From sequence record NC_048054.1: DNA of 64,000 bases. One strand, written 5' to 3'. Under the pieces are notes generated by a model. The model did not search any database. It saw only the letters and a list, made by a program, of their open reading frames with translations, and was not told the DNA's origin. Positions 3,674-50,071 of this stretch are shown piece by piece. Position 1 is the first letter of the stretch; every line of letters starts with the position of its first letter. A program made the translations under genes and the position numbers.

Positions 3674-4495
3674 TTAATCACCTACCGCAGTATACCAGAA
3701 GTCCCAGCCAGCAGTGTTGGTGCCAGTAGACTTGATGGTGAAGCCGCCTAACAGGGCGTTCTCATTCATCGCGCTTGTACCATCCAGATTGTAGAGCTGG
3801 TAGGTCTTCGCTTGGTTGAGTGCAGCGTTCACAAAGGTAATCTGAATGCTGATACAACGGTTGATGAATGCCGTGTTAAACACAACATGAATTGTGTCGG
3901 TAGTTGATGCGTTCACGACTCGACCCATGTTATGAGTAAAGCCAGTGTTCATATCGCGGTTGCTACCAATCCATGCGTTCGGTATCACTGCACCGGTAAC
4001 AGGGTTGAGCGCTTGAGACACACGATACTCGTCAATAGCAGCATCGCGGCCTGGGCTACCAGTAGGTCCTGTTGCACCCGTAGGGCCGACAGCACCAGTG
4101 TTACCTGTAGCACCTACAGGGCCTGTGTTACCTGTAGGACCGTTACGTCCACGAGGCCCACGAGGTCCTGGACAGCCGTCTTCACCGTCGCGACCATCAC
4201 GACCATCAGCACCAGGGAGGCCACGCAGACCTTCTTTACCCTGTTTACCTTCACGTCCTGATTTAAGCTGGTCGGCAGTAGGCAAACCAATCACACTCGA
4301 TTGACTGCCATCAGGCCAGATGACTGTTAGCGTACCTGTAGTTGTGTCGAACTCAACACCCTGAGAGCCGGGAATCTTTGCAGCCTCTGCTGGGTCGATA
4401 AACGCAACAGCGGTCGCCGTCTTCTTACCTAACACTTTACCGACAGGCGAAGCACCGCCGTCGATAAGTGCAGGATTAATCTTCGTAAGAGACAT
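3674..4495 (-). CDS. Collagen-like fibre protein A (24 Gly-X-Y triplets) with C-terminal beta domain
   Basis: GREGKQ...GSPGRD triplet run; shared N-module FDTTTGTLTV..GLPT. Confidence 0.85.
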   Translation of the reverse strand: MSLTKINPALIDGGASPVGKVLGKKTATAVAFIDPAEAAKIPGSQGVEFDTTTGTLTVIWPDGSQSSVIGLPTADQLKSGREGKQGKEGLRGLPGADGRDGRDGEDGCPGPRGPRGRNGPTGNTGPVGATGNTGAVGPTGATGPTGSPGRDAAIDEYRVSQALNPVTGAVIPNAWIGSNRDMNTGFTHNMGRVVNASTTDTIHVVFNTAFINRCISIQITFVNAALNQAKTYQLYNLDGTSAMNENALLGGFTIKSTGTNTAGWDFWYTAVGD

Positions 4496-4506
4496 GGGCT
4501 AAACTC

Positions 4507-4710
4507 CTAACCAGTCAGTGTTGTCCAATCTGGTTGACCCGATTGTCCGGCCTCAGGATTTTTAACTTTGGTGTTGTTGATTGTCATGCGAACCCAACGC
4601 ACACTTCCATCTGAATCCTGATACCGAACCTTCGTTCCACCATACGCTAAATTAGCTACCCATCTGTCTCTGCTTGGGTCTTTGAATGCTAAACGTGCAT
4701 AAGCTGGCAT
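4507..4710 (-). CDS. Small fibre adaptor-like protein (67 aa, three Trp-ended repeats)
   Basis: Closely packed between fibre genes; repeats resemble the N-terminus of 7637..9661. Confidence 0.7.
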   Translation of the reverse strand: MPAYARLAFKDPSRDRWVANLAYGGTKVRYQDSDGSVRWVRMTINNTKVKNPEAGQSGQPDWTTLTG

Positions 4711-4719
4711 ACGCTCTCC

Positions 4720-7593
4720 TTAACTGTCAATCTCGTCTGGCTCCCAGCACAGGATAGGACGGCGCCACACTTGGAATACGCCTTGAGGACTAGCGAGCCC
4801 ATCGAAGCAATCCATAGTTGTACCACCTGAGTTGCCGCTTTTCATCAGCGTCTGCAAGTCTTGATACCAAGATGCACGGCCACCAGAGTCAGCTTCAAAC
4901 AATCCTTCCCATACCATATCGAAAGCGCCTTTCCACGCATTGAAGTGGTGAGAAGAAACAGCACCGTCTTCCGTTGTACACAATACCATGTACTGATAAT
5001 CCTTCACACACGGAATCATGTAGTTGTTACCGCGTGGCATTGTCGTACTGTTATTGTTGAAGATACATTCCCAACCAGTACGGTCAGCAGCGCCTGTCGT
5101 CAGGAACAGCGGACGACGGATGATCATCATGATGCCGTTTTCTGTACCGCCATTCTTCGATTTCTCGCAGTACGCATTACAACGGAACGCTCGGTCAACG
5201 GTGAACGTCGTTGAGTTCGAGAAGTCTCGGTTATAATAGTTAGCGCCCCACTTAGGCAGATATTCGGTAGGCGGTACGAAGAAATGACGCTCTGCAAGTT
5301 CAACCTCACCGTAGCGATCATACGCAAACACGATGTATTCATAGCCAGGCGCAATGGTAATGTTGTGGCCCTGAGTACCAACCCCGTTCCACTTCCAGAC
5401 AACCTGCCAGTCATTCGAATCACGCGATGCTTCTTCGGTAATGAGCTGATACTTACGCTCATAGATGTGCCACACTTTCCCTTCTTCTGTGGTGTTGATG
5501 TACAACGAGTTCGGGTCATTGATATTCCCGTTCTCAGTGCCGCAGTAAATCTTATGCGACGCACCAGCAGAGTTATAGATAGTGCCGGACCCGATTGAGC
5601 CAAACATATCCCAATTCATCATCAGGTGAGAGGTACACATTTCGTTCTGGCCGCTACCGTCCGACGTTGTGACAAGATATTCACAGAGGTCCTTGAACGG
5701 ATATTTAACGTAGCGATTGTTCGCACGGTTAACAACGTGAACCCAATCGTGGGACTGAATCTTAGGCACAGGGAAGCATGGGTTAGTTACGGAAACAACG
5801 AAGGTCTTTGTCTCGTACATAGGCAGCTTCTTGAAACGGTTATCCCTAATCGTAACAGTATGCTGCATACCCATTGTCGAAGCACCATCCTGAGAGCCAA
5901 GCACTTTGTAGTAGCGCAGATGACTGCTCTTGGTGTTTTCGAACAGGCCATTGAGCGCCATGCTCATGTTACCTTCGCGGTCTGTGCCTGTCACGTATGG
6001 GAAGCCATTCGTATCGAAGTCATAGCCGACAGAGAAGTAACTGTCAGTATCAGATGACTTGGCACCACGATACATTTCATTCCACGCGTTACCCTCACCA
6101 ATACCAGGCTCACCGAACAGTGAGTATGCAGCACGATACACGTATTGCGATCCTGCGTACACACGACGCGATGCACCGATGCGATACATGGCTTGAGGCA
6201 GACCGCCCTGCAGTCGGTTAACGTCGGCTGTATCGTATGACACAACGTAGACGTAATGGTCAGAGCCGATAGAGTTCAGGAAAGCCGCACATGCCTGAGC
6301 ATTCGCAACGCCTGGGTTAGTTCCTTCGGCCGATGCGTGAATGTCAAATGTACGACGCTCCACCAGCGCAAGGTCAGACTTACGAATCTTATAAACGTTC
6401 CAGCCACGAGTATCGGTGTAGCGGGTACCGTTAAAGATCGTGTAGCCTGTATCTCCTGTGTCCAGATAACGCTGATAGCCTACAACGTGAGAGAAGATTC
6501 GGCTACGCGCTGCAAGCGATTGAGCATTCTCGTTTGACCAACTAACAGACACGTCACCCGCAGCCATACGTGCTGCCCAATCGTCAGGCTTGTATGGATA
6601 TGTTGTGACGTCGAAGTCTACCTGATATGCAGAGCCAGGTTCGACGCAGCACTTATCACGATAGATAAGAGGCGGGTCAAGGATAACGTCATCGGAGATA
6701 TCAACCTGTCCGCAATAGAACTGACGCCATGTGCCAGGCTGGCCACCGATAGTACCTGGACCTGCTTGAGTGGTTCCTGTGAACTGATACGCGGCAGAGA
6801 CTTCGAAGTTGATTTGGTTATGCAACTGCACAACGTTAGTCCAAGATACGTGGTTGCCGAACGCGTTAATGCTTTTGTTCTTTGCTGCGACAGTGGCCGC
6901 AATATATGCTTGGCCATTGCTGCGAATACCGAGTGGGTTGAAGATCGCATTGAAGTTTACGTTACCTTCATACGGACCTTTCTGCAACACAATCAGGCTA
7001 ACACCATTACGATGCGCTTCACGCAGAGCAGTAAGCATCTGAGTAGGCATACTCTGGTTGGTAGCAGACAGCAGAAGCATTACGCAACTGAACTGTTTGA
7101 AATACTTGTACGTACCATCGTAACCATACGCACCAGCGTTAATCTCTTGCCAGCTATGTGCCAGCATGTCGAGAGGGATGCGCTGCATATACGCAACGAG
7201 TTGTCCCCACGACTCCATTGCAGTGTCATCATTGACAGGTGCAAGGTCTGATATGACAAGCATGGTGCTGCCATATGTGATGTTCGAGTTGTAGCCGCGT
7301 TGTGTCAACAGGTGACGCAGCACACCCATGTTGTTAATGCTCTTATTGCGGTAGTTACCGAGCCAACCGTAGTTAGCATCAACAAGAGGACTACCGTCAC
7401 GGACGAATCGACCATTCATGTAGACAGAGCCGAAGCCGCATACGTATGAAAGAGCATGACCATCAACAACAAAAGAGGTGAAGCGTGAGCTATCAACTGC
7501 CATAGCGTCTACTGCGGTAATAGAGCCATCGCCAGGACTACCGCTAAATACAGGCGTAATGCCTCGCGCATACAAGCAGCTTTGTTGCAGCAT
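4720..7593 (-). CDS. Large putative receptor-binding protein with ILEI/PANDER (GG-lectin-like) domain and three C-terminal repeats
   Basis: 957 aa. RTFDIH..AAFLNSIGSDHYVYVVSYD..YRAAYSLFG fits ILEI/PANDER. Three W-x-x-V...RRP/ERK repeats at the C-terminus. Confidence 0.65.
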   Translation of the reverse strand: MLQQSCLYARGITPVFSGSPGDGSITAVDAMAVDSSRFTSFVVDGHALSYVCGFGSVYMNGRFVRDGSPLVDANYGWLGNYRNKSINNMGVLRHLLTQRGYNSNITYGSTMLVISDLAPVNDDTAMESWGQLVAYMQRIPLDMLAHSWQEINAGAYGYDGTYKYFKQFSCVMLLLSATNQSMPTQMLTALREAHRNGVSLIVLQKGPYEGNVNFNAIFNPLGIRSNGQAYIAATVAAKNKSINAFGNHVSWTNVVQLHNQINFEVSAAYQFTGTTQAGPGTIGGQPGTWRQFYCGQVDISDDVILDPPLIYRDKCCVEPGSAYQVDFDVTTYPYKPDDWAARMAAGDVSVSWSNENAQSLAARSRIFSHVVGYQRYLDTGDTGYTIFNGTRYTDTRGWNVYKIRKSDLALVERRTFDIHASAEGTNPGVANAQACAAFLNSIGSDHYVYVVSYDTADVNRLQGGLPQAMYRIGASRRVYAGSQYVYRAAYSLFGEPGIGEGNAWNEMYRGAKSSDTDSYFSVGYDFDTNGFPYVTGTDREGNMSMALNGLFENTKSSHLRYYKVLGSQDGASTMGMQHTVTIRDNRFKKLPMYETKTFVVSVTNPCFPVPKIQSHDWVHVVNRANNRYVKYPFKDLCEYLVTTSDGSGQNEMCTSHLMMNWDMFGSIGSGTIYNSAGASHKIYCGTENGNINDPNSLYINTTEEGKVWHIYERKYQLITEEASRDSNDWQVVWKWNGVGTQGHNITIAPGYEYIVFAYDRYGEVELAERHFFVPPTEYLPKWGANYYNRDFSNSTTFTVDRAFRCNAYCEKSKNGGTENGIMMIIRRPLFLTTGAADRTGWECIFNNNSTTMPRGNNYMIPCVKDYQYMVLCTTEDGAVSSHHFNAWKGAFDMVWEGLFEADSGGRASWYQDLQTLMKSGNSGGTTMDCFDGLASPQGVFQVWRRPILCWEPDEIDS

Positions 7594-7607
7594 GTTATGT
7601 CCTTAGA

Positions 7608-7631
7608 TCGAGAAGAGGGGCCGAAGCCCCT
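7608..7631 (-). terminator. Hairpin AGGGGC-TTCG-GCCCCT, probable terminator (weak U tail)
   Basis: Perfect 6-bp stem with C(UUCG)G loop just after the 7637 stop. Confidence 0.55.
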
Positions 7632-7636
7632 ATATG

Positions 7637-9661
7637 TTATTCAAATACTACGTTGGTGATGCCCAGATAGTCTAGATCGTTCGAGTCGCCGCGGTCGCCG
7701 CCGCCTTGAACACGAAGCCAGATTTCTTGGCCTACAGGTATGTTCACGTCAAACGTGAAATACTGATAGACACCACTACTGTTTCTCGGAGACTGTGCTG
7801 CGCCTTCGCCAGCAGTTCGCTCGTAGATATCAATAGTATGCCAACCACCATTCCTGCCGTCGTACACCCAGACGAAAGTGATCTGCTTAATCGGCTTAGT
7901 GAAGAAGTTACCCCACTTGAACCAACCATTCACACCACCCCAGATGTTCATGTAGTTACCGTCGCGTGTCCACACAGGAGAAGCATCAGGGCGACCAGTA
8001 CCACGACCACCTGTCTGTTCCCATGCGTTTGGCTGCCACGGCAGAACGTCTGAATCTGGCGGCTGATCGTTACCACCTTCAATTGTTACGCAACGATAAG
8101 GAACGGTGAAGTCACTTACGTTAATCTTAGGCGGTTGAATAGGACAGTACACGAAGTACGACCAATCACATCCGATAGGAGCTGTCACTCGCACAGTGAT
8201 GTTAGAGCGCAACACATGCTCAGGGTATTTCCAAAATTCGAGTGTACCAGTCTTGCCCGCAGCAACGATAGAAGTATCGAGTACGTTCATGTCTTGGTCA
8301 AACACTTCGAACTTGGTATCGAACGAGTTCGCAACACAAACAACAAGCTCGGCGCGAATGTCCGACTGAGTTCCTAACGCAAAATTATCTTCTGTGGTTG
8401 GATGCCCGGCAGAGTATACGCTGTAGCTCTGGCATGGGTGCATGTATTCACGCGCACCACGTTCACCTGGACAGTACAGACTGTAGAAGCAACTCGCAAG
8501 CGATGCAGCATTACCAAAGTCCTTACTGACCACGCGCACCATGATATCACACGCAACGCCTTGAGGGTCAAAGTAGAAATACAGATAACCCTCACCAGTA
8601 CGCGCATCAAGCGTTGTGGCGATACGACGACCAGACTGATAGACCTCAATGAAGTCGAACGTTTCCCATGAGGTGTAATCGAGATACATCCAACCCGCTG
8701 TCCAACCAATGAAGTGATAGTATTCGAAAGCGTTAGCATTCTGAATACGTTCCGCGATAGGCCAAACAGTTGCATGGCACGGCGCAGGGAAGATTGGGCT
8801 GCCGATGTAGTCTGGATGAATGACGTCAGGGAAGTTGATAACGTCATACGCGGCCTGACTATCGAGAGCTAATCCACCACGGTCAGAAGGTGCTGCGAGG
8901 CGCGGCGGATATACTTCTAAACTCCAGCCGTATCCCTGAGTTGTACGCACACGCACCATGATACGCATATCAGCAGCGTCAGGGTCGAACTGGAATTTGA
9001 TACGCGAGCGACCAGCCAGCTTACCACACGTCGATGCAACACGCACACCCATATGGTACACGTCAACACTCGCACCAGCTGGCGCATAGGACGCGATCAT
9101 CAGCTCAACGTAACCTTCGATTGCTGGCATTGCATAATACGTCTCGGTGATAACAGCACCACGCCCATGAACAGAAGCGTAAGGCACGTTAGGGTTAGCG
9201 TAAGTGCCTAGCCCTGCGCGAGAAGCAACACCAGTAGGGTCGTATGATTCGATGGTCTTGATGCCGGGTCTATTGATAGATCGACCAGTAGGAGGAGAAA
9301 AAGAGTTGATAAGACCGAAGCCAGTGCGACCAGCATCAGGCAAATCGAACCCCGCAGGATAGCCTTTGAGGATATCGTATTTCTCACGACCGCCACTCCC
9401 TATCCCGTTACCAGAACCTTTGGTAGTTGACGTCGGTCCGCCGCCACATGCACCCGTCTCAAGGTTTGAGCACGGGTCATCATAAGTAGGGTCGAAAGAG
9501 TCGTTGATGTGCATCCAACTCTTTCCCCACTGATTACGCACACTGAATTTGTCTGGGCTTAATGGTGTCCAGTCTCCTGCATGTGTGCGTATGAACATGG
9601 GCGTGTCCACGCAGTCAAGCCAACCGTTATTCGCAGCATTACGAACGCGAAAACGAGCCAT
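7637..9661 (-). CDS. Fibre-associated protein with three internal beta-sandwich repeats and a C-terminal carbohydrate-binding-like domain
   Basis: 674 aa; repeats ending MVRV..W/FxYxxYxP three times; N-terminal R-x-R..W triple. Confidence 0.7.
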   Translation of the reverse strand: MARFRVRNAANNGWLDCVDTPMFIRTHAGDWTPLSPDKFSVRNQWGKSWMHINDSFDPTYDDPCSNLETGACGGGPTSTTKGSGNGIGSGGREKYDILKGYPAGFDLPDAGRTGFGLINSFSPPTGRSINRPGIKTIESYDPTGVASRAGLGTYANPNVPYASVHGRGAVITETYYAMPAIEGYVELMIASYAPAGASVDVYHMGVRVASTCGKLAGRSRIKFQFDPDAADMRIMVRVRTTQGYGWSLEVYPPRLAAPSDRGGLALDSQAAYDVINFPDVIHPDYIGSPIFPAPCHATVWPIAERIQNANAFEYYHFIGWTAGWMYLDYTSWETFDFIEVYQSGRRIATTLDARTGEGYLYFYFDPQGVACDIMVRVVSKDFGNAASLASCFYSLYCPGERGAREYMHPCQSYSVYSAGHPTTEDNFALGTQSDIRAELVVCVANSFDTKFEVFDQDMNVLDTSIVAAGKTGTLEFWKYPEHVLRSNITVRVTAPIGCDWSYFVYCPIQPPKINVSDFTVPYRCVTIEGGNDQPPDSDVLPWQPNAWEQTGGRGTGRPDASPVWTRDGNYMNIWGGVNGWFKWGNFFTKPIKQITFVWVYDGRNGGWHTIDIYERTAGEGAAQSPRNSSGVYQYFTFDVNIPVGQEIWLRVQGGGDRGDSNDLDYLGITNVVFE

Positions 9662-9670
9662 GACTTCTCC

Positions 9671-10162
9671 TTACGGTCTTACCCAGATGGCACCTGGCGC
9701 AATCTCATTATCAATAGCAGGGTCGGTGTCTTGCACGAACACCTGTACTGTACCTGGGTTACCTGGGGCACCAGTTGGGCCAGTAGGGCCTGTCGGACCA
9801 GCAGGACCACGATTACCTACGTAACCTTGCTTCCCCTGTAGTCCATCATTACCACGAGGACCAGGACAGCCATCAGTACCACGACGACCATCGCTACCCA
9901 TGAGACCGTCAATACCGTCACGACCAGCAGGCCCAACGCCGCCGGCAGGACCGTAACCGATGCTATGAATAGTAGGTAGCCCAGATATCTGGAGCTTGCC
10001 GATAGTAGGGATGTTGATAGACAGAAGACCTGTAACCGCATCAAATGCCCCGCTAAGTTGGCTATCGTCTTGCGTAGTGTCAACTGTGATTCCCCCTTCG
10101 GTCGCTACGACAGGACCAGAAGCATTGGCCTTGACTAGCGATATATCAACTTTTTCTACCAC
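9671..10162 (-). CDS. Collagen-like fibre protein B (~23 triplets)
   Basis: Gly-X-Y run, shared N-module, C-terminal PGAIWVRP motif. Confidence 0.85.
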   Translation of the reverse strand: MVEKVDISLVKANASGPVVATEGGITVDTTQDDSQLSGAFDAVTGLLSINIPTIGKLQISGLPTIHSIGYGPAGGVGPAGRDGIDGLMGSDGRRGTDGCPGPRGNDGLQGKQGYVGNRGPAGPTGPTGPTGAPGNPGTVQVFVQDTDPAIDNEIAPGAIWVRP

Positions 10163-10171
10163 GTTGCCTCC

Positions 10172-10804
10172 TTATGGCCATGTGATATTCTGATCTTTGG
10201 TAGGGTCCACCCAGATCGTGCCAGCAGCAACGTTCCCTGGGTTAGTAGCACTGACGATGATAGACAGGCGTCCAGCAGGACCTGCAGGGCCGGTAGGACC
10301 CGTTGGTCCTGTAGAGCCAGTAGCGCCTGTCGGACCAGTACCGCCACGAGGACCAGTAGGACCAGTAGGACCCATAGGGCCTGTTCTACCATCTGGGCCA
10401 GTAGGACCAACAGGACCGGGTAGTCCGTCACGCCCGTCTGGCCCAGGGATACCTTGCTCACCATCTGGGCCCACAGGACCAGTACATCCAGGCTCACCTG
10501 GATTACCATCGCGACCATCTCGTCCGTCTTTACCATCAGCGCCTGTCTCTCCTCTTCCGCCCTGACGACCTTCTGGTATATCAGCAGCAGTAGGGAAACC
10601 GCCCACCTTAACTGTCTGCCCGTTAGCAAACTTGAGAGTAAGAATACCCGAAGTTGCATCGAACGACGAATCAGCAGTTACCTCTGAGGGAACCTGTTCG
10701 TCGCTAGGGTCTATCGAGAGAACCCCAGACTGAGCGCGAATCGCAGTAGGCGTAGACGAAGAACCAGCCTGAATGAGACCGGTCTTAACTTTAATCAGAC
10801 TCAT
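10172..10804 (-). CDS. Collagen-like fibre protein C (34 triplets)
   Basis: Gly-X-Y run rich in GPT; C-terminal AGTIWVDP motif. Confidence 0.85.
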
Positions 10805-12243
10805 TACTTTTTCTCCGCTTTCGCAACAATATCCGTGTTGTGTGCGAGCACATCACCAACGAAATAACAATCAAATGGATCAACGTCGATATCAACAGTT
10901 TTCACCAGATTATCTACGCGGCGAAACTCGTACACAGACACAGGTCCCTTACGACCTAGCACTGTATTCCCAGGCTGTACGTCACGCGCAGGGATATAAC
11001 GCCATACGCTATCGTCATACACAAGCACTGGATGTTCGTGTGTGAACTTCTGGCCGTTGATAACGAAGTAATGATCTTCTTCGCCATACTTCAAACCGAC
11101 AACAGTAGCGTTCACCAGATTACCTTTTAGGCTAGGCGAAGACCACTGACGGAAGTTCTTCGGCTGGTTAGAGAAACTCAGCAGGCTATCACCTACACGT
11201 AAGTCCTCGACAGCTTTAGGTCCTGTAATAGTTTCGACAACAGAACCAAACACAATACAGCCAGACGTTGAGCTTGTAGGGTTACGTGCAACAACTGTCA
11301 GCGCAGAACTCACGGTAACAGTAGGGCGTGAGGGTTGGCCCATGTCAGTCACTACGCAACGAATAGTGCCTTTGATTGTACGATCAGCACCAAGTCCGAG
11401 ACGCAGATAGAAGTTAACAATACACGTTGAGGTATCAGTAGCGCCAAGCGTTACGCCCTCAGTGGTTGTGATAGACCATTGATACTTATATGGACCTATA
11501 CCACCACGTGCATTGACAGGAAGGTATGCAAGCGAAGTAAATACATCAGAGCCTTGCACTGCACGTTGACCTACCATGTACAGGTTAGACACTGACGCAG
11601 CAAGAGGCGTTATAGTAGGCAGAGGCGGTGCTGGCGTAACGTTGGCTGTAGGGTACAACCAAACGAACACACGACCGTCTGTAGGCTGCGTGTTAGACTG
11701 AACAGCAGTTGTAATAGGCGCTGGGCCAGTAGGACCTGTAGCACCAGAGATACAGCTTGCGCCAGTAGCACCACGAGGACCGATGTTCCCTGTAGGACCG
11801 GGAGGACCGTCTGGACCAGTAGGACCGTCTGGACCTTGACGCCCAGTATCACCAGGAGGACCGTCTTCACCGTCGCGTCCTGGGTCACCAACAGGGCCAG
11901 TCTTACCTTTAGAGCCAGGGCCACCTTCGCAGCCCTGTCTACCTGTCTCACCGTCTCGACCATCACGTCCGTCACGGCCGGGAGCACCTGGAGCGCCGCG
12001 ACGCCCAGGCTTCCCTTCACCGAACATAGCAATAGTAGGAAGTCCGGGGACGTTCACTACTTCCCCGTTCTTCTTGATGAACACCAACACGCCTGTCTTG
12101 CTGTTAAACCTTACGCTTGCGATTTGAGTATTCGTCGCTAAGTCCGTAGACTCAAACTCGACGCTACCATCAACACCAACCAGCGACTTACCTTCATCGT
12201 TAGCGGTTGTTTCGATTTGCGAAAGTTTTAACTGTGTTGTCAT
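10804..12243 (-). CDS. Collagen-like fibre protein D with Ig-like domain and C-terminal Hint/intein domain
   Basis: 29+3 triplets, an Ig-like segment ([11 protein letters not shown]), then a Hint domain C329-N469. Confidence 0.85.
10837..11259 (-). other. Hint (mini-intein / bacterial intein-like) domain, 141 aa, no homing endonuclease
   Basis: Block [21 protein letters not shown]; block B FTHEHP; block F TVDIDVD..YFV; block G LAHN followed by Thr. Confidence 0.85.
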
Positions 12244-21501: not shown

Positions 21502-21502
21502 G

Positions 21503-21628
21503 TTATTTCCTCTTGTCTGAGGCTCTAGGAATTTTTGGAGCCTTTGCGGGCACGAAGGGACTCGTATCGAGTTTTCGTTTACCGTGAAGAATGTCTAAAT
21601 ACTGTTTCCAATTGGTGCAGCGGCTCAT
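21503..21628 (-). CDS. Small basic protein (41 aa, MSRCTNWKQYLDILHGKRK...)
   Basis: GAGGAG SD 6 nt upstream; TAA-C-ATG coupling to PAAR; GCTAATTT motif 23 nt upstream. Confidence 0.6.
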   Translation of the reverse strand: MSRCTNWKQYLDILHGKRKLDTSPFVPAKAPKIPRASDKRK

Positions 21629-21650
21629 GGTATTCTCCTCTGTTAGACAC

Positions 21651-21658
21651 AAATTAGC
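21651..21658 (-). promoter_or_regulatory. GCTAATTT motif, candidate late promoter for the baseplate operon
   Basis: Located between a terminator and the first gene of the operon. Confidence 0.55.
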
Positions 21659-21671
21659 TTGTTGTGCAGCA

Positions 21672-21707
21672 GAAACGAAAACGGGCGACCCGAAGGCCAC
21701 CCGTTTT
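21672..21707 (-). terminator. Rho-independent terminator closing the ncRNA-like interval
   Basis: AAAACGGGTGGCC-TTCG-GGTCGCCCGTTTT then CGTTTCT. Confidence 0.8.
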
Positions 21708-21737
21708 CTAGTGCTTGGATTTTGTGTCGTTACTCCC

Positions 21738-21896
21738 TCACACCCGAAGCGAGTGCCTATCAGCTTTCGCTGGTAAGCCGGAGTGGAAGACCGAGAGTGG
21801 AGCCGCACGCCACGGCAACAGTAAGTGACTCTCGGGCCTAGATAGCGCGTGACCAAGCAGCACAATCGCCATCAACGACACGAAGAACAAAATCAT
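21738..21896 (-). CDS. Possible 52-aa hydrophobic peptide (MILFFVSLMAIVLLGHAL...)
   Basis: AGGAG SD 5 nt upstream and an 18-aa hydrophobic N-terminus; its 3' part overlaps strong RNA hairpins. Confidence 0.35.
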   Translation of the reverse strand: MILFFVSLMAIVLLGHALSRPESHLLLPWRAAPLSVFHSGLPAKADRHSLRV

Positions 21897-21964
21897 GTTT
21901 GCTCCTGTGTCTCTCTGTAAGTAAAACATTTGCAAATGTCGATCAAGTTACTTCGAATTGCCCT

Positions 21965-22362
21965 TCGCCCAACATCACTAGGGTTTCAATTCTTTTTCTC
22001 TCTTTACCGCCTGGGTTGCGGCGAACCGCGCACAAGAACAACGCTTCAACGATACGTGGGCAGGAAGGGCACGTACCGCATTCACATCGCTCAAGCGAAG
22101 GAGGTCTCCCATCGGTGATCTGCGGTGGTTAATACACTCTTTAACAATCGCTCTTGTTGTGCATTAGATCGTGGTAGGAACGCGATTGACCGCTAACAAG
22201 TCCTATACGATATTTCACTACCCGGAAAAAGTGGGCAAGCTATGGCAGCACGTCAACGACAGCAGGCGCGGACACACTCCATTAAGCATTGTTAAGGGCA
22301 ACACTTAACAGGCTGTGAACAGCTTTGACCAAATGTAGAGTCGCTCGTCGCCCAACATCACT
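21965..22362 (-). repeat. 15-nt direct repeat AGTGATGTTGGGCGA (copies at 22348-22362 and 21965-21979)
   Basis: Exact match; both copies preceded by CAGG-NN-GTAAA(A)GAG and enclosed by different but pairing stems. Confidence 0.85.
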
Positions 22363-22957
22363 TGAGTATCTCGTCTACACTCTTTTACTCCCTGAATACC
22401 GTACAAGGAATACGGCACCCATGAGGGTCTGCGGATGTTTATCACTCTCAGACTCTTGAGCCACTATCTGGAAACTAACACGTTGAGTCGTCCGCTGGAT
22501 GACGTGTTAGCTCTCCTCTCCCCGTCGTGCGAGGGCCAGAGTGGTAGCTGATGGATTGTCATGAAGTCCTGACAGGAGTCATCGCTTCCCAATGCCCACA
22601 GAGTGAAAGTCTATGCGCATCAGGCAGCGTAGGCTGCGGTACTGCTGTCCCTATTAGATGGTCCACAACGTTGAGAATACGTTCCAACCATCTACGTGCC
22701 TAGAGGCCATTGCCGTGCCATGTCTTATGCAAGATGAAATCAAGCTGGGTCCTGGTAGACGTCAGCAGCAGAGCAATAGTCTATCACGTGGGTGCCGGGG
22801 TTGTCCTCACGATTACAGAGCGTAAACTCAAACCGGCTGGAGGCCTATGTGTTGGCAAGAACAACTCACAGGTTTATGGCTCACGGAGAGCGCCCGCTAA
22901 GTACACTCTCCGTTGATACATCTTGATATTACTATCTGCAATTTTTATTTACAGATT

Positions 22958-48081: not shown

Positions 48082-48963
48082 TTAACCTCGCAGTGCTCCA
48101 CGCGCCCAAGACTTAGCAAGTGCCAGAGTCATACGCGATGGGTTATGCAGTTTGACTTCGCCTTTATGGACAGCAGTGAACGGCTCATGCGGGTTAGTAC
48201 CGCGACCAGAGCGATAGGCTGCTTCGTTGAATCCATCAAACAACGTTACTACCCAGCCAGTAGATTTCTCAGAACATTCACCGCAGGCTTTATCCCACGC
48301 AATCTTACCGCACACACGACCACCAGCAGTAACAGCATAACTGATCTGCTCAGTGCCTTTGTAGATATCAGGCGCCTTGATGGTCTTGAAGGTAACACGC
48401 GATGCAGATTCAGAACGCGGCACCATTTTCTCTTTCAATGCTTCTACGTCGAGTGAACCCCAGAATGATTCAAACAACGCAGCGAACTTCTGTTCAATAG
48501 GAAGTTCGAGAGCATTGATTTGTGCGATAGTGCTGGAACTATCCTCCAGCACACGATTCAGGAAGTAACCGCCAATCACTACAGGCAGTTGTGTGCCTTG
48601 AGAGCCAGTAGTCAAGCCAGCTTTCTTGCAGTAGATTTCAGACAGGCCGATAGCCAGACGCGCAAGAGTCATGAACGTCTGCTTCTCGGTACTGTTAGCA
48701 ATCTCTGTGTAGATACGCGCAGCAATGGCAGGAACAACGGTACGTTTCGCCACGCTCAGAACATCCTCTGGCTTGATAGGCTGGCCGAGCTTTTTACGCG
48801 CAGCCAGTTCGAATGCGTTAATCAGACTGGCTTTGTTCGCTGCCGTCAACGACTCGCTTAACTTCGTAGTTGTCAGCTCCGCGCTGTTCACTATCCCCTG
48901 TTGAGGCGTTTTCTCCAGTCGGCGCACTCCCGACGTCGATCTCACCAATCGCTTCACTGTCAT
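48082..48963 (-). CDS. Hypothetical (possibly head) protein (~293 aa)
   Basis: Most plausible start MTVKRLVRSTSG (AGGA SD); overlaps the glycosyltransferase tail by 146 nt. Confidence 0.65.
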   Translation of the reverse strand: MTVKRLVRSTSGVRRLEKTPQQGIVNSAELTTTKLSESLTAANKASLINAFELAARKKLGQPIKPEDVLSVAKRTVVPAIAARIYTEIANSTEKQTFMTLARLAIGLSEIYCKKAGLTTGSQGTQLPVVIGGYFLNRVLEDSSSTIAQINALELPIEQKFAALFESFWGSLDVEALKEKMVPRSESASRVTFKTIKAPDIYKGTEQISYAVTAGGRVCGKIAWDKACGECSEKSTGWVVTLFDGFNEAAYRSGRGTNPHEPFTAVHKGEVKLHNPSRMTLALAKSWARGALRG

Positions 48964-50071
48964 TTGTTTGTTCCTGAGTAGCAGGCTGCTGCAAATAGGC
49001 AAGCAGACCAGAGTTCTGAATTGCCTCTTCCAGATTCTCACCACGATGAATGGTAAGCTGGGCGAGGTAGTTGAGAGCAGGTTCAACCATACCGAGATTA
49101 CGACAGCCCCAATAAGCTGTATCGTAACATAGGTCTAAATTAATAGCGGTCTGGTCAAACAAGAAACTTTTTGGATTCTGCTTAGTGGCTTCAATGCCTT
49201 GAATCGCCATGCCAGTAGCATTGATGTTATCGCCATGACGATAGAAGATATCGGCCAGCATCGCATAACACTCGATGCGGTCGGGACGGAATGCGATGGC
49301 GCGATAACATGCAGCAATCGCCTCCTGAGTGAATCCCTGTTTGAATGTTGCTTTCGCCAGCTCAATGTTAGCGATAGAAACATAGTCAGCCCACTTCGCA
49401 ATGCCGGCCAAGCGATCTACCTCACGACGGGCATCGTCCAGTAGGTCAGGACGTTCGTAGTAGCTTACTGCGTAGCACAGTTCACGCGCATAGTAGAAGC
49501 TGCAACGATCATCATGAGGATAATCACCCACGTCCAGACCAAGCTCCAGCAGATAACCGCGAGGCTTTGAATGGTCAGGGTAGTGGTCAGTTGCAAAGGT
49601 CGCTTCTACTGTACGCAACTGCTGGCCAGGCTTACGAGAAGACAGGACTTCATGCGCACGGTACTTCCAGAAGTAAGAGCGACGACGATACGCTTTCATC
49701 TGCTGGTAGTGACTGTCACCGTTGCGCATCAGAATCCAAACTGCTTCGGCATGTTTAATGTGCTTAGTGTTGCGCAGCGTTTCAACCCAATTAGGGTCAT
49801 CGAAACGTTCGTCAATGTCGAGCCACACAACAAGGTCATCTTCGGAGAATGGCGTAGCGGCCAGCTCACGACTCGCGCCCAGATTACGTTCTTCTGATAC
49901 GTCGAACATATGGTACAGGTTAGGGTGCGTGAACGCCGAGATGATGTTCGTGGTTTGGTCTTCGCTACCGGTATCAACGATACTGATCGCATCAGCACCA
50001 GCAACGTGCTCCAACCACTCACGCATATTCTTTTCTTCATTACGGCAGATAGCCGCTACGCAAATTCTCAT
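48818..50071 (-). CDS. GT2 family glycosyltransferase with TPR repeats (SunS/SgtA-like architecture)
   Basis: ICVAAICRNEE, IVDTGSEDQT, WLDIDE (DxD), WKYRAHE, then RCSFYYARE and TPR helices. Confidence 0.9.
   Translation of the reverse strand: MRICVAAICRNEEKNMREWLEHVAGADAISIVDTGSEDQTTNIISAFTHPNLYHMFDVSEERNLGASRELAATPFSEDDLVVWLDIDERFDDPNWVETLRNTKHIKHAEAVWILMRNGDSHYQQMKAYRRRSYFWKYRAHEVLSSRKPGQQLRTVEATFATDHYPDHSKPRGYLLELGLDVGDYPHDDRCSFYYARELCYAVSYYERPDLLDDARREVDRLAGIAKWADYVSIANIELAKATFKQGFTQEAIAACYRAIAFRPDRIECYAMLADIFYRHGDNINATGMAIQGIEATKQNPKSFLFDQTAINLDLCYDTAYWGCRNLGMVEPALNYLAQLTIHRGENLEEAIQNSGLLAYLQQPATQEQTNDSEAIGEIDVGSAPTGENASTGDSEQRGADNYEVKRVVDGSEQSQSD

What the first reader, a model, noticed from the sequence alone, without database searches (positions are those of the whole stretch)
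4098..11945. Thr-rich collagen fibres plus a GT2-TPR glycosyltransferase: possible phage-encoded virion O-glycosylation system
Seen: the distal halves of all four collagens are dominated by GPT/GAT/GNT/GST (Thr at Y). A GT2+TPR enzyme (48818..50071) sits among virion genes, not DNA-modification genes. Known: Thr-rich bacterial collagens such as BclA are O-glycosylated, and in Clostridioides difficile the glycosyltransferase SgtA is required for BclA glycosylation. Glycosylated Thr at Y can stabilise hydroxyproline-free triple helices. Inference: the phage may glycosylate its own fibres for stability or shielding.
Basis: inference. Interest (0 to 1): 0.7.

Follow-up and report, generated by a model that had tools for sequence, protein, structure and literature searches.

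The report
Phage glycosyltransferase paired with collagen fibres
A jumbo phage of a plant-rotting bacterium carries four collagen-like fibre proteins and one enzyme from a family that usually sits next to threonine-rich collagen genes in other phages and in spore-forming bacteria, so the phage probably sugar-coats its own fibres, though nobody has shown this yet.

Summary
The window is Dickeya phage vB_DsoM_AD1, a 262-kb jumbo myovirus. It encodes four paralogous collagen-like fibre proteins beside the baseplate genes (AD1_102, 106, 107, 108).

Thr at the Y position totals 28 of 110 triplets.

The enzyme AD1_145 (48818-50071) is the only annotated glycosyltransferase. It has a GT-A domain with an invariant DXD motif, followed by a TPR-like helical domain. 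Its closest solved folds are the peptide glycosyltransferases ThuS and SunS.

The main new result is distributional:
- 37 of 65 distant viral homologues have a collagen-like gene within 10 kb.
- 49 of 80 nearest cellular homologues, nearly all Bacillota, do too.
- These genes usually abut the enzyme gene, with 57-59% Thr at Y; sampled bacterial ones carry BclA_C domains.
- Only 1 of 111 random viral loci has one.

This is the published SgtA/BclA3 arrangement of Clostridioides difficile. The AD1 profile aligns end to end with these enzymes (hhalign E 2e-74).

In AD1 the enzyme lies 38 kb from the fibres, inside the head-gene block, and no glycan has been measured. Fibre O-glycosylation is therefore well supported by inference but not shown.

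The parts
3674..4495 (-). AD1_102, a collagen-like fibre protein of 273 aa. It has a shared N-terminal domain, 24 Gly-X-Y triplets (4043-4258) and a C-terminal domain with a weak Gp53-like_C hit. The GxT tract is at about 4061-4141, with 7 Thr in 9 triplets.
   Evidence: The seven Thr-at-Y sites are kept in a mean of 5.86 of 6 enterobacterial clade phages, while the X residues at those triplets are kept in 4.57 of 6.
9671..10162 (-). AD1_106, a collagen-like fibre protein of 163 aa with 23 triplets (9746-9952). It has a short GxT cluster of three consecutive triplets at about 9773-9799.
10172..10804 (-). AD1_107, a collagen-like fibre protein of 210 aa with 34 triplets (10265-10570). The GxT tract is at about 10292-10408, with 10 Thr in 13 triplets.
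10804..12243 (-). AD1_108, a collagen-like fibre or virion protein of 479 aa with 29 triplets (11755-12015) and scattered GxT. It has a middle domain and a C-terminal Hint-like domain at about 10828-11259.
   Evidence: Collagen 1.1e-13; PT-HINT 9.4e-6, below the Pfam cut-off; phrog_38766, 1e-255.
4720..9661 (-). Two large genes of the same fibre block lying between the collagen genes: AD1_104 (4720-7593, 957 aa, weak ILEI hit) and AD1_105 (7637-9661, 674 aa). Their role is unknown. They are listed as neighbours, not as proven parts.
   Evidence: The gene order is conserved in Alexandra, Y3, JA29, Yoloswag, fHe-Yen9-02, PaBG and NCTB.
48818..50071 (-). AD1_145, a TPR-containing GT2 glycosyltransferase of 417 aa. 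The GT-A domain is at about 49556-50071 (DXD at D85/D87). The TPR-like helical domain is at about 48992-49552. A disordered acidic tail is at about 48821-48985.
   Evidence: -: family assignments.
- GmaR N-terminal domain, 2.9e-8.
- invariant D33-T-G-S36 and D85/D87 in 40 homologues.
- pLDDT 85.7.
- ThuS/SunS, E 2e-12.
- BLASTP 3e-24 and hhalign 2e-74 to collagen-linked relatives.
48082..48849 (-). AD1_144, a 255-aa protein of unknown function. Its start overlaps the 3' end of the glycosyltransferase gene by 32 nt. It is a candidate alternative partner or substrate.
   Evidence: The same overlap and gene order appear in distant clade members. PHROG family of unknown function.

Best explanation
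AD1_145 is a soluble, metal-dependent protein O-glycosyltransferase made in the infected cell. It belongs to the TPR-containing GT2 family, the kind exemplified by SgtA of Clostridioides difficile.

Proposed mechanism, all inferred:
- It takes a sugar from a host nucleotide-sugar pool. No nucleotide-sugar synthesis gene is annotated in the phage. By analogy with SgtA the donor is most likely a UDP-hexose or UDP-HexNAc.
- It transfers the sugar to Thr at the Y position of the clustered GxT triplets in the distal collagen stalks of the four baseplate-associated fibre proteins (AD1_102, 106, 107, 108).
- The TPR-like domain holds the repetitive acceptor chain.
- The released virions therefore carry O-glycosylated collagen fibres.

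Shown here:
- the fold, the catalytic motifs and the family membership of the enzyme;
- the collagen nature of the fibres and their conserved Thr sites;
- the family-wide gene linkage between such enzymes and Thr-rich collagens.

Inferred only: that the AD1 enzyme acts on the AD1 fibres, the identity of the sugar, the timing, and any effect on stability, protease resistance or recognition.
For: 1. Enzyme type.
- Pfam GT2.
- The D33-T-G-S36 and D85-x-D87 motifs are invariant in 40 homologues.
- The confident AF2 model has a GT-A domain plus 11 helices.
- The best full-length structural matches are the peptide glycosyltransferases ThuS and SunS (E 2e-12). Further matches are to the TPR domains of O-GlcNAc transferase and GmaR.
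- There is no hydrophobic segment: the maximum Kyte-Doolittle 19-aa window is 0.87.

2. Family-level linkage in viruses.
- Of 65 viral contigs outside the AD1 clade that carry a homologue, 37 have Gly-X-Y runs of 8 or more triplets within 10 kb. That is 31 of the 43 loci with at least 5 kb of upstream flank.
- 14 lie within 1 kb and nearly all are on the same strand. Genes often abut or overlap.
- Thr at Y is 2257/3970, or 57%.
- Random viral loci give 1 of 111. Fisher p = 4e-19. By enzyme cluster it is 10/22, p = 2e-8.

3. Family-level linkage in cells.
- The 80 nearest cellular homologues are nearly all Bacillota.
- 49 have Thr-rich collagen genes (59% Thr at Y). The median distance is 441 bp and 45 lie within 1 kb.
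- Sampled neighbours carry BclA_C (1e-43 and 1e-13).

4. Homology of the AD1 enzyme to these relatives.
- hhalign of the AD1-clade profile against the collagen-linked enzymes gives probability 100%, E 2e-74, over 350 columns.
- BLASTP to a Clostridium tagluense member gives 3e-24 over 356 residues.

5. An independent isolate. Actinomycetia phage DSL-LC01 has a homologue at the end of a cluster of four collagen genes.

6. Published precedent. SgtA is 358 aa, with a GT-A domain followed by a TPR_11 domain. It lies next to bclA3 and adds beta-O-GlcNAc to Thr of GPT repeats (PMC7157674).

7. Inside AD1.
- The four fibres are the only collagen runs in the genome.
- AD1_145 is the only annotated glycosyltransferase.
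- Thr-at-Y sites are conserved across the clade while the X residues vary.
- The outgroup phage Motura gave no hit in the AD1_145 tblastn search and has no collagen run in the 41 kb fetched around its baseplate gene.

8. In a rough NJ tree, 7 of the 8 informative members of the AD1 clade's sister group are collagen-linked.
Against: - In AD1 and all its relatives the enzyme gene is about 38 kb from the fibre genes. It is fixed in the order ligase, Ig-like protein, enzyme, two unknowns, prohead protease. Its end overlaps the next gene. Gene neighbourhood in this clade therefore points to head proteins, not fibres.
- Thr at Y is only 25% in AD1 and 14-17% in PaBG, Lu11 and NCTB. One NCTB paralogue has none. 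Enzyme-adjacent collagens have 57-59%.
- 28 of 65 viral and 31 of 80 bacterial homologue loci show no collagen within the flanks read, so the family is not exclusively collagen-linked.
- Co-occurrence within the clade carries little weight, because the whole structural block is inherited together.
- E. coli prophage collagens with 20% Thr at Y melt at 42 C, and no Thr glycosylation was observed in the recombinant protein (PMC3368898).
- The sequence of SgtA itself could not be retrieved for a direct comparison.
- No mass-spectrometric or lectin evidence exists for any virion of this clade. The PaBG proteome paper reports none.
Confidence: 0.57

Rival explanations
1. The enzyme is a protein glycosyltransferase, but its substrate in this clade is a head or other virion protein encoded beside it. 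Candidates are the overlapping AD1_144, the Ig-like AD1_146, or a capsid decoration protein. The collagen fibres would then be unmodified.
For: - The position between DNA ligase and prohead protease is conserved from AD1 to PaBG and in metagenomic relatives. The 29-35 nt overlap with the downstream gene is also conserved.
- Virion glycosylation of capsid and tail-tube subunits is known in mycobacteriophages (as summarised in PMC12619734).
- In one collagen-linked viral locus (L041) the pair itself sits next to a major head protein gene.
Against: - No genuine coding frame of the head block has a Ser/Thr-rich tract. Only two annotated genes, both outside the head block, reach 45% Ser+Thr over 40 aa, and neither shows a repeat.
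- The family-wide partner is a collagen.
- Gene order in jumbo phages mixes functions: a DNA ligase sits in the same block.
Confidence: 0.15
2. The enzyme acts on a host envelope glycan or another non-protein acceptor such as LPS, capsule or cell-wall polymer. This would serve, for example, to block superinfection. It is the reading implied by the database names 'beta-1,4-glycosyltransferase' and 'moron, auxiliary metabolic gene'.
For: - PHROG and RefSeq names.
- A weak hit to GtrB-like O-antigen conversion (2.3e-5).
- Structural matches to the wall-teichoic-acid enzymes TarS and RmlT at E of about 1e-5.
- Published papers read phage glycosyltransferases this way (PMC10202952, PMC7029224).
Against: - There is no membrane segment.
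- The C-terminal TPR-like domain and the full-length matches are to peptide and protein glycosyltransferases, with far better scores (2e-12 against 1e-5).
- The conserved neighbour of the family is a protein, not a polysaccharide locus.
- The database names are transferred labels, not tests.
Confidence: 0.1
3. The enzyme glycosylates a host protein during takeover, for example flagellin or a regulator, as GmaR does in Listeria. The phage's own proteins would not be the target.
For: Sequence match of the GT domain to GmaR (2.9e-8). GT2-TPR enzymes include flagellin glycosyltransferases (the writer's general knowledge).
Against: - The match covers only the generic GT domain.
- The gene lies in the late structural block.
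- The full-length relatives are collagen-linked.
Confidence: 0.07
4. The enzyme modifies phage DNA by base glycosylation, as a defence against restriction.
For: Many phage glycosyltransferases do this (reviewed in papers cited). A DNA ligase lies one gene away.
Against: - No DNA glycosyltransferase appears among the top 50 structural matches.
- A TPR domain implies a protein partner.
- No hydroxymethylase or other base-modification gene is adjacent.
- The family neighbourhood is with collagens.
Confidence: 0.03

Closest known systems
SgtA / BclA3 of Clostridioides difficile (exosporium collagen O-GlcNAcylation)
   Same: - A cytoplasmic GT-A domain followed by a TPR domain. The AD1 core is about 360 aa and SgtA is 358 aa.
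- A weak Pfam TPR_11 signature.
- A metal-dependent DXD-type enzyme.
- The partner is a Gly-X-Thr collagen-like surface fibre.
- The nearest cellular relatives of the AD1 enzyme lie next to BclA_C-bearing collagens.
   Different: - AD1 is a phage of a Gram-negative host.
- The fibres have no BclA_C domain and much shorter, Thr-poorer collagen runs: 23-34 triplets and 25% Thr at Y.
- The enzyme and fibre genes are 38 kb apart rather than adjacent.
- The enzyme has an extra acidic disordered tail.
- Identity to Bacillota members is only about 26%.
- A direct comparison with SgtA itself was not possible.
Glycocin S/O-glycosyltransferases SunS and ThuS (PDB 7msn, 7msk)
   Same: They are the best full-length structural matches (Foldseek E 2e-12, TM about 0.5, 370-386 aligned columns). 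The domain order is the same: GT-A followed by a helical TPR-like domain that binds a peptide acceptor.
   Different: - 13-15% identity.
- No glycocin precursor, transporter or immunity genes are annotated near AD1_145.
- Their acceptors are Cys or Ser in small helical peptides, not collagen repeats.
Virion glycosylation in mycobacteriophages (Freeman et al. 2023, as summarised in PMC12619734)
   Same: Phage-encoded glycosyltransferases decorate the phage's own virion proteins.
   Different: - There the glycans sit on C-terminal extensions of capsid and tail-tube subunits.
- Collagen-like fibres and TPR-containing GT2 enzymes are not mentioned in the summary read here.
- The original paper could not be read.
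Collagen-like prophage tail fibres of E. coli O157:H7 (EPclA-D)
   Same: Short trimeric collagen stalks in phage fibre proteins. Pro is frequent at X, and Thr and Gln are frequent at Y (20% Thr).
   Different: - In the recombinant EPclA protein, made in E. coli, no Thr glycosylation was observed.
- Their flanking domains (PfN, PCoil, PfC) differ from those of AD1.
- They contain no Cys. The AD1 family has one conserved Cys at triplet 10.

Membership tests
TPR-containing GT2 protein O-glycosyltransferases partnered with Thr-rich collagens (SgtA type) | N-terminal GT-A (GT2) domain with nucleotide-binding and DXD motifs | tested here: met
   Pfam PF00535 at 7.9e-7, above the cut-off. D33-T-G-S36 and D85/D87 are invariant in 40 homologues. 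The same motifs are invariant in the collagen-linked set.
TPR-containing GT2 protein O-glycosyltransferases partnered with Thr-rich collagens (SgtA type) | C-terminal TPR-like helical domain directly following the GT domain | tested here: met
   The AF2 model has helices over residues 174-360 at pLDDT above 88. Foldseek and PDB sequence hits are to consensus TPR and OGT TPR domains. The Pfam TPR_11 hit is weak (0.009, below the cut-off).
TPR-containing GT2 protein O-glycosyltransferases partnered with Thr-rich collagens (SgtA type) | Full-length homology to members that lie next to BclA-like or phage collagen genes | tested here: met
   hhalign gives probability 100%, E 2e-74, over 350 columns. 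BLASTP gives 3e-24 and 26% identity over 356 aa to the Clostridium tagluense member.
TPR-containing GT2 protein O-glycosyltransferases partnered with Thr-rich collagens (SgtA type) | Gene adjacent to, or in an operon with, a Thr-rich collagen-like gene | tested here: not met
   In AD1 the nearest collagen gene ends at 12243 and the enzyme gene starts at 50071. No Gly-X-Y run occurs in the 10-kb flanks of any clade member. Both parts are present in every clade genome examined.
TPR-containing GT2 protein O-glycosyltransferases partnered with Thr-rich collagens (SgtA type) | Direct sequence relationship to the characterised enzyme SgtA of C. difficile | not testable with these tools
   No C. difficile protein appeared among the 120 hits listed for a clostridial family member. 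No tool fetches it by name. Only the published description could be compared.
TPR-containing GT2 protein O-glycosyltransferases partnered with Thr-rich collagens (SgtA type) | Transfer of a sugar to Thr of Gly-X-Thr repeats | not testable with these tools
   This is a biochemical property. No virion glycoproteomic data for this clade were found.
Glycocin glycosyltransferases (SunS/ThuS) | Fold: GT-A domain plus helical acceptor-binding domain | tested here: met
   Foldseek E 2.4e-12 to 9.8e-12, TM 0.48-0.52.
Glycocin glycosyltransferases (SunS/ThuS) | Neighbouring glycocin precursor peptide with export and immunity genes | tested here: not met
   The annotated neighbours are an Ig-like protein, DNA ligase, two unknown proteins and the prohead protease. 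The PHROG hits of the neighbours are phage families of unknown function.
Bacterial and viral collagen-like proteins (four fibres) | Uninterrupted Gly-X-Y repeat long enough for a triple helix | tested here: met
   23-34 triplets each. Pfam Collagen at 1e-13 to 6e-15.
BclA-type exosporium collagens | BclA C-terminal (C1q-like) domain | tested here: not met
   None of the four AD1 fibres hits BclA_C. The bacterial neighbours of the enzyme family do.
Mycobacteriophage-type virion glycosylation | Ser/Thr-rich C-terminal extensions on capsid or tail-tube subunits as acceptors | tested here: not met
   No coding-strand window with at least 45% Ser+Thr occurs in the capsid or tail-tube genes of AD1.
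Phage DNA glycosyltransferases | Structural similarity to DNA base glycosyltransferases and adjacent base-modification genes | tested here: not met
   None appears among the top 50 Foldseek matches. No hydroxymethylase is annotated beside the gene.

The most novel reading that the evidence does not exclude
SgtA-like TPR glycosyltransferases paired with Thr-rich collagen-like proteins may form a widespread, so far unrecognised virion O-glycosylation module of tailed phages. It would span actinophage-like, uncultured and jumbo lineages. It would share ancestry with the exosporium glycosylation system of spore-forming Bacillota. The AD1 clade would be a version in which the enzyme gene has moved away from its substrate genes.

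A more speculative sub-reading concerns the single Cys conserved at triplet 10 of every fibre. It could be an S-glycosylation site, because the closest solved folds are S-glycosyltransferases.
Probability: 0.5. Interest if true: 0.78.

Novelty: new variant of a known kind. Interest (0 to 1): 0.68.

Why it matters
If the fibres are glycosylated, the adsorption apparatus of a whole clade of jumbo phages carries a sugar coat that sequence-based models of host recognition ignore. The clade infects the plant pathogens Dickeya and Erwinia, and also Yersinia and Pseudomonas.

Such a coat could affect fibre stability without hydroxyproline. It could also affect protease resistance, environmental persistence and antigenicity. 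These properties matter when such phages are considered for biocontrol.

More broadly, the gene-neighbourhood result suggests that many phage genes now labelled 'beta-1,4-glycosyltransferase', 'auxiliary metabolic gene' or 'DNA/cell-wall glycosylation' are really virion protein glycosyltransferases. It also links phage fibres and bacterial exosporium hairs through a shared enzyme-substrate pair.

None of the papers read here makes this connection. A 2026 review of jumbo phage biology contains neither 'glycosyl' nor 'collagen'.

Tried and rejected
1. A structural-module control built from the baseplate wedge protein. The protein search reached only relatives inside the clade, which themselves carry the collagens, so it could not serve as a control. 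I used 111 random viral loci drawn with an arbitrary 14-mer instead. These are not matched for being in a structural module.

2. Retrieving C. difficile SgtA for a direct comparison. A search from a Clostridium tagluense family member listed 120 close relatives, but none was from C. difficile. Cluster look-ups gave only generic names.

3. NCBIfam gave no family for the enzyme.

4. Reading Freeman et al. 2023. The paper is not held, so it is cited only through another paper's summary.

5. Looking for other acceptors in AD1. A scan of every piece of the genome for Ser/Thr-rich windows found mostly non-coding frames opposite acidic tracts and nothing convincing in real genes.

6. Looking for site-specific conservation of Thr between AD1 and the distant PaBG, Lu11 and NCTB fibres. 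No single Thr position is invariant across all of them. Conservation is clear only within the enterobacterial branch.

7. The NJ tree is rough. It has long branches and a midpoint root, and the PaBG enzyme did not group with the other clade members. I give it little weight.

8. Rfam and tRNA scans of the whole window found nothing.

Full report
**Identity of the window.** The 8.7-kb region of the finding is 100% identical to Dickeya phage vB_DsoM_AD1 (MH460463.1). This is a 261,658-bp jumbo myovirus of the genus Alexandravirus. Window position equals record position minus 62,000. About 45 related records, mostly Erwinia phages, share the region at 73-92% identity. The window is one long leftward block of late genes: fibres, baseplate, tail tube and sheath, capsid, prohead protease. 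A few DNA-metabolism genes are interspersed.

**The observation.** Four minus-strand genes encode collagen-like proteins: AD1_102, AD1_106, AD1_107 and AD1_108.
- Each has a related N-terminal domain of about 75 residues, one uninterrupted Gly-X-Y run (24, 23, 34 and 29 triplets) and a different C-terminal part.
- All four pass the Pfam Collagen threshold. All hit PHROG tail-fibre families.
- They are the only Gly-X-Y runs of 7 or more triplets in the entire genome, which was scanned piece by piece.
- The first half of each run is rich in charged residues (GRD and GKD triplets). Thr at Y is concentrated in the second half, but unevenly: 7/12 and 10/17 in AD1_102 and AD1_107, and only 3/12 and 4/15 in AD1_106 and AD1_108.

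Overall Thr at Y is 25%. Published figures are 8.9% for viral collagens in general, 20% for E. coli prophage collagens and 48% for Gram-positive bacterial collagens (PMC3368898, Table 4).

**The enzyme.** The ORF 48818-50071 (AD1_145) is the only annotated glycosyltransferase of the genome. No nucleotide-sugar synthesis gene is annotated.
- It has a Pfam GT2 domain and a weak TPR hit.
- In an alignment of 40 homologues the D-T-G-S nucleotide-binding motif and the D85-x-D87 motif are invariant.
- The AlphaFold model is confident (mean pLDDT 85.7). It shows a GT-A domain (residues 1 to about 170), an all-helical domain (174-360) and a disordered acidic tail (363-417).
- Against the PDB, the best full-length matches are the glycocin peptide glycosyltransferases ThuS and SunS (E 2e-12). 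After them come TPR proteins, including the TPR domains of O-GlcNAc transferase and the Listeria flagellin glycosyltransferase GmaR. GmaR's GT domain is also found by sequence (2.9e-8).
- There is no membrane segment.

These results show a soluble glycosyltransferase of the kind that acts on peptides or proteins. The RefSeq and PHROG label 'beta-1,4-glycosyltransferase, moron' is a transferred name.

**Co-occurrence inside the clade.**
- The enzyme and the fibre family occur together in the enterobacterial branch (Alexandra-like, Y3, Yoloswag, the JA phages, fHe-Yen9-02).
- The four fibres were also read in PaBG, Lu11 and NCTB. PaBG and Lu11 have enzyme homologues. For NCTB this was not verified.
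- The four fibres are strikingly conserved in architecture. Triplet numbers are 29/34/23/24-25 in eight of the nine phages examined (Lu11 differs). A single Cys at the X position of triplet 10 is present in 34 of 36 collagen domains.
- Thr at Y is 23-26% in the six enterobacterial members. It is 14-17% in PaBG, Lu11 and NCTB, where Gln often replaces it. One NCTB paralogue has none.
- Within the enterobacterial branch the Thr sites are more conserved than their surroundings. The seven Thr of the AD1_102 tract are kept in 5.86 of 6 phages on average. The X residue of the same triplets is kept in 4.57 of 6, and other Y residues in 4.47 of 6.

This fits selection on Thr itself. Co-occurrence within one clade with conserved synteny carries little weight on its own.

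**Position of the enzyme gene.** In AD1, PaBG and metagenomic relatives at 43-47% identity, the order is DNA ligase, an Ig-like protein of about 300 aa, the enzyme, two small unknown proteins, then the prohead protease. The end of the enzyme gene overlaps the next gene by about 30 nt. In this clade the enzyme therefore sits in the head block, 38 kb from the fibres.

**The decisive comparative result.** I searched IMG/VR with the enzyme alignment and read 10-kb flanks.
- The 13 loci of the AD1 clade had no collagen run in their flanks, as expected.
- Of the 65 loci outside the clade (23-34% identity), 37 had Gly-X-Y runs of 8 or more triplets. That is 31 of the 43 loci with at least 5 kb of upstream flank.
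- 14 were within 1 kb and 20 within 2 kb. Almost all were on the same strand.
- In many loci the collagen gene ends 10-15 nt before the enzyme gene (L035, L041, L054), or the enzyme gene overlaps the start of a collagen gene (L076). Other arrangements are downstream (L072, L086) or divergent (L077, an ORF of more than 3,200 codons with 976 triplets).
- Thr at Y in these runs is 2257/3970, or 57%.
- Neighbouring genes include a major head protein and an endolysin, so these are phage contigs.
- An isolated phage, Actinomycetia phage DSL-LC01, shows the same pattern. Its homologue closes a cluster containing four annotated collagen genes with 58% Thr at Y.
- As a control, 111 random viral loci (980 kb, drawn with an arbitrary 14-mer) contained one such run. 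Fisher's exact test gives p = 4e-19. At the level of 22 enzyme clusters (at least 50% identity) it is 10 against 1 of 111, p = 2e-8.
- The control is not matched for structural modules. Direct abutment and the extreme Thr content are not explained by that.

**Cellular relatives.** The 80 best loci in one-genome-per-species bacterial and archaeal genomes are nearly all Bacillota: Clostridia, Bacilli, Oscillospiraceae, Paenibacillaceae and others.
- 49 of them have Thr-rich collagen genes (1757/2987, or 59% Thr at Y). The median distance is 441 bp, 45 lie within 1 kb, 44 are upstream and 43 are on the same strand.
- Sampled neighbours carry the BclA C-terminal domain (1.1e-43 and 1.4e-13).
- NCBI and UniRef name these enzymes 'tetratricopeptide repeat-containing glycosyltransferase'.
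- The AD1-clade profile aligns with a profile of these bacterial and collagen-adjacent phage enzymes over 350 columns, with probability 100% and E 2e-74. AD1_145 aligns end to end with the Clostridium tagluense member (26% identity, 3e-24).

**Comparison with what is known.** The published SgtA of Clostridioides difficile is 358 aa. It has a GT-A domain (1-260) and a TPR_11 domain (262-358), and it lies immediately upstream of bclA3. In vitro it adds beta-O-GlcNAc from UDP-GlcNAc to Thr (and Ser) of GPT-repeat peptides in a Mn-dependent reaction (PMC7157674).

The AD1 enzyme matches this description in size, domain order and Pfam signature. Its nearest cellular relatives show the same gene pairing. 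I could not obtain the SgtA sequence, so direct membership is untested.

The solved structures closest in fold, SunS and ThuS, share the architecture but not the genomic context.

Phage virion glycosylation is known for mycobacteriophage capsid and tail-tube subunits (summary in PMC12619734). I found no paper linking a TPR-GT2 enzyme to collagen-like phage fibres. Papers on freshwater actinophages and pelagiphages that mention both glycosyltransferases and collagen-like proteins interpret the enzymes as DNA or cell-surface modifiers. A 2026 review of jumbo phages mentions neither.

**Most likely mechanism.**
- Shown: the enzyme's fold, motifs and family; the collagen nature and conserved Thr sites of the fibres; the family-wide enzyme-collagen linkage.
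- Inferred: during late infection AD1_145 uses a host UDP-sugar to O-glycosylate Thr in the clustered GxT triplets of the four fibre stalks. The helical domain engages the repetitive chain, and the virion then carries glycosylated fibres.
- I put this at about 0.57.
- The main rival is a different virion protein as acceptor, suggested by the head-block position (0.15). The other rivals are a host envelope glycan (0.10), a host protein (0.07) and DNA (0.03).
- Whether glycosylation would stabilise the hydroxyproline-free helix or shield the fibre is untested. E. coli prophage collagens with similar Thr content melt at 42 C, and no Thr glycosylation was observed in the recombinant protein.

**Novelty and verdict.** The enzyme-substrate kind is known from SgtA/BclA3. 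Its presence in phages is not described in the literature I could search. That covers its pairing with fibre collagens across many viral lineages and the uncoupled arrangement in a Gram-negative jumbo-phage clade. I rate it a new variant of a known kind, with interest 0.68.

Noticed in passing
window 21502-22957: A 1.46-kb stretch between the PAAR-like spike gene (AD1_114) and AD1_115 has no ORF longer than 120 codons and no annotation. It is nevertheless conserved at 73-93% nucleotide identity across Alexandravirus phages. In several of those phages short hypothetical genes are annotated there. There is no Rfam family and no tRNA. It could be a non-coding RNA, a regulatory region or a decayed gene.
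   Followed up: partly
window 10828-11259 (C-terminus of AD1_108): The largest collagen fibre protein ends in a Hint or intein-like domain (Pfam PT-HINT 9.4e-6 and Hint_2 1.4e-3, both below the cut-offs). Relatives are annotated as 'contains intein domain' (Y3, NCTB). The JA29 orthologue is about 150 residues shorter and also lacks the conserved Cys. This suggests a self-processing C-terminal module on a fibre protein.
   Followed up: partly
window 4043-4258, 9746-9952, 10265-10570, 11755-12015, and loci L003-L005, L282-L286: Every fibre collagen run has a single Cys at the X position of triplet 10, preceded by GRD and GKD triplets. This holds in 34 of 36 collagen domains across nine phages. 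Triplet numbers are 29/34/23/24-25 in eight of the nine phages, from Dickeya to Pseudomonas phages; Lu11 differs. One Cys per chain cannot make a symmetrical disulfide knot, so its role is unexplained. Possibilities are metal binding, inter-fibre linkage or modification.
   Followed up: partly
window 50026-50071: The GenBank start of AD1_145 (record 112026) is 15 codons downstream of the first ATG of the ORF. It cuts off the conserved first strand and part of the NEE motif that all homologues align to. The longer ORF (start at window 50071) is the likely true start.
   Followed up: yes
window 48818-48849: The 3' end of the glycosyltransferase gene overlaps the start of AD1_144 by 32 nt. Overlaps of 29-35 nt recur in relatives at 43-47% identity (L287, L289). 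This suggests translational coupling with a protein of unknown function.
   Followed up: partly
locus L077:1-9820 (IMG/VR contig of 155 kb): An open reading frame of more than 3,270 codons, cut by the contig end, contains 976 Gly-X-Y triplets, 464 of them with Thr at Y. It is transcribed divergently from a homologue of the glycosyltransferase. This is an exceptionally long viral collagen.
   Followed up: no
window 4720-7593: AD1_104, a 957-aa protein between the collagen genes, has a near-threshold hit to the eukaryote-type ILEI/FAM3 domain (1e-5, 26.4 bits against a cut-off of 27). The protein is conserved across the clade and its role is unknown.
   Followed up: no
locus L012:18433-20004 (Actinomycetia phage DSL-LC01): The gene just upstream of the collagen-linked glycosyltransferase homologue is annotated as a tryptophan halogenase. 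It ends 4 nt inside the glycosyltransferase gene. It may be a second modifying enzyme in that fibre cluster.
   Followed up: no
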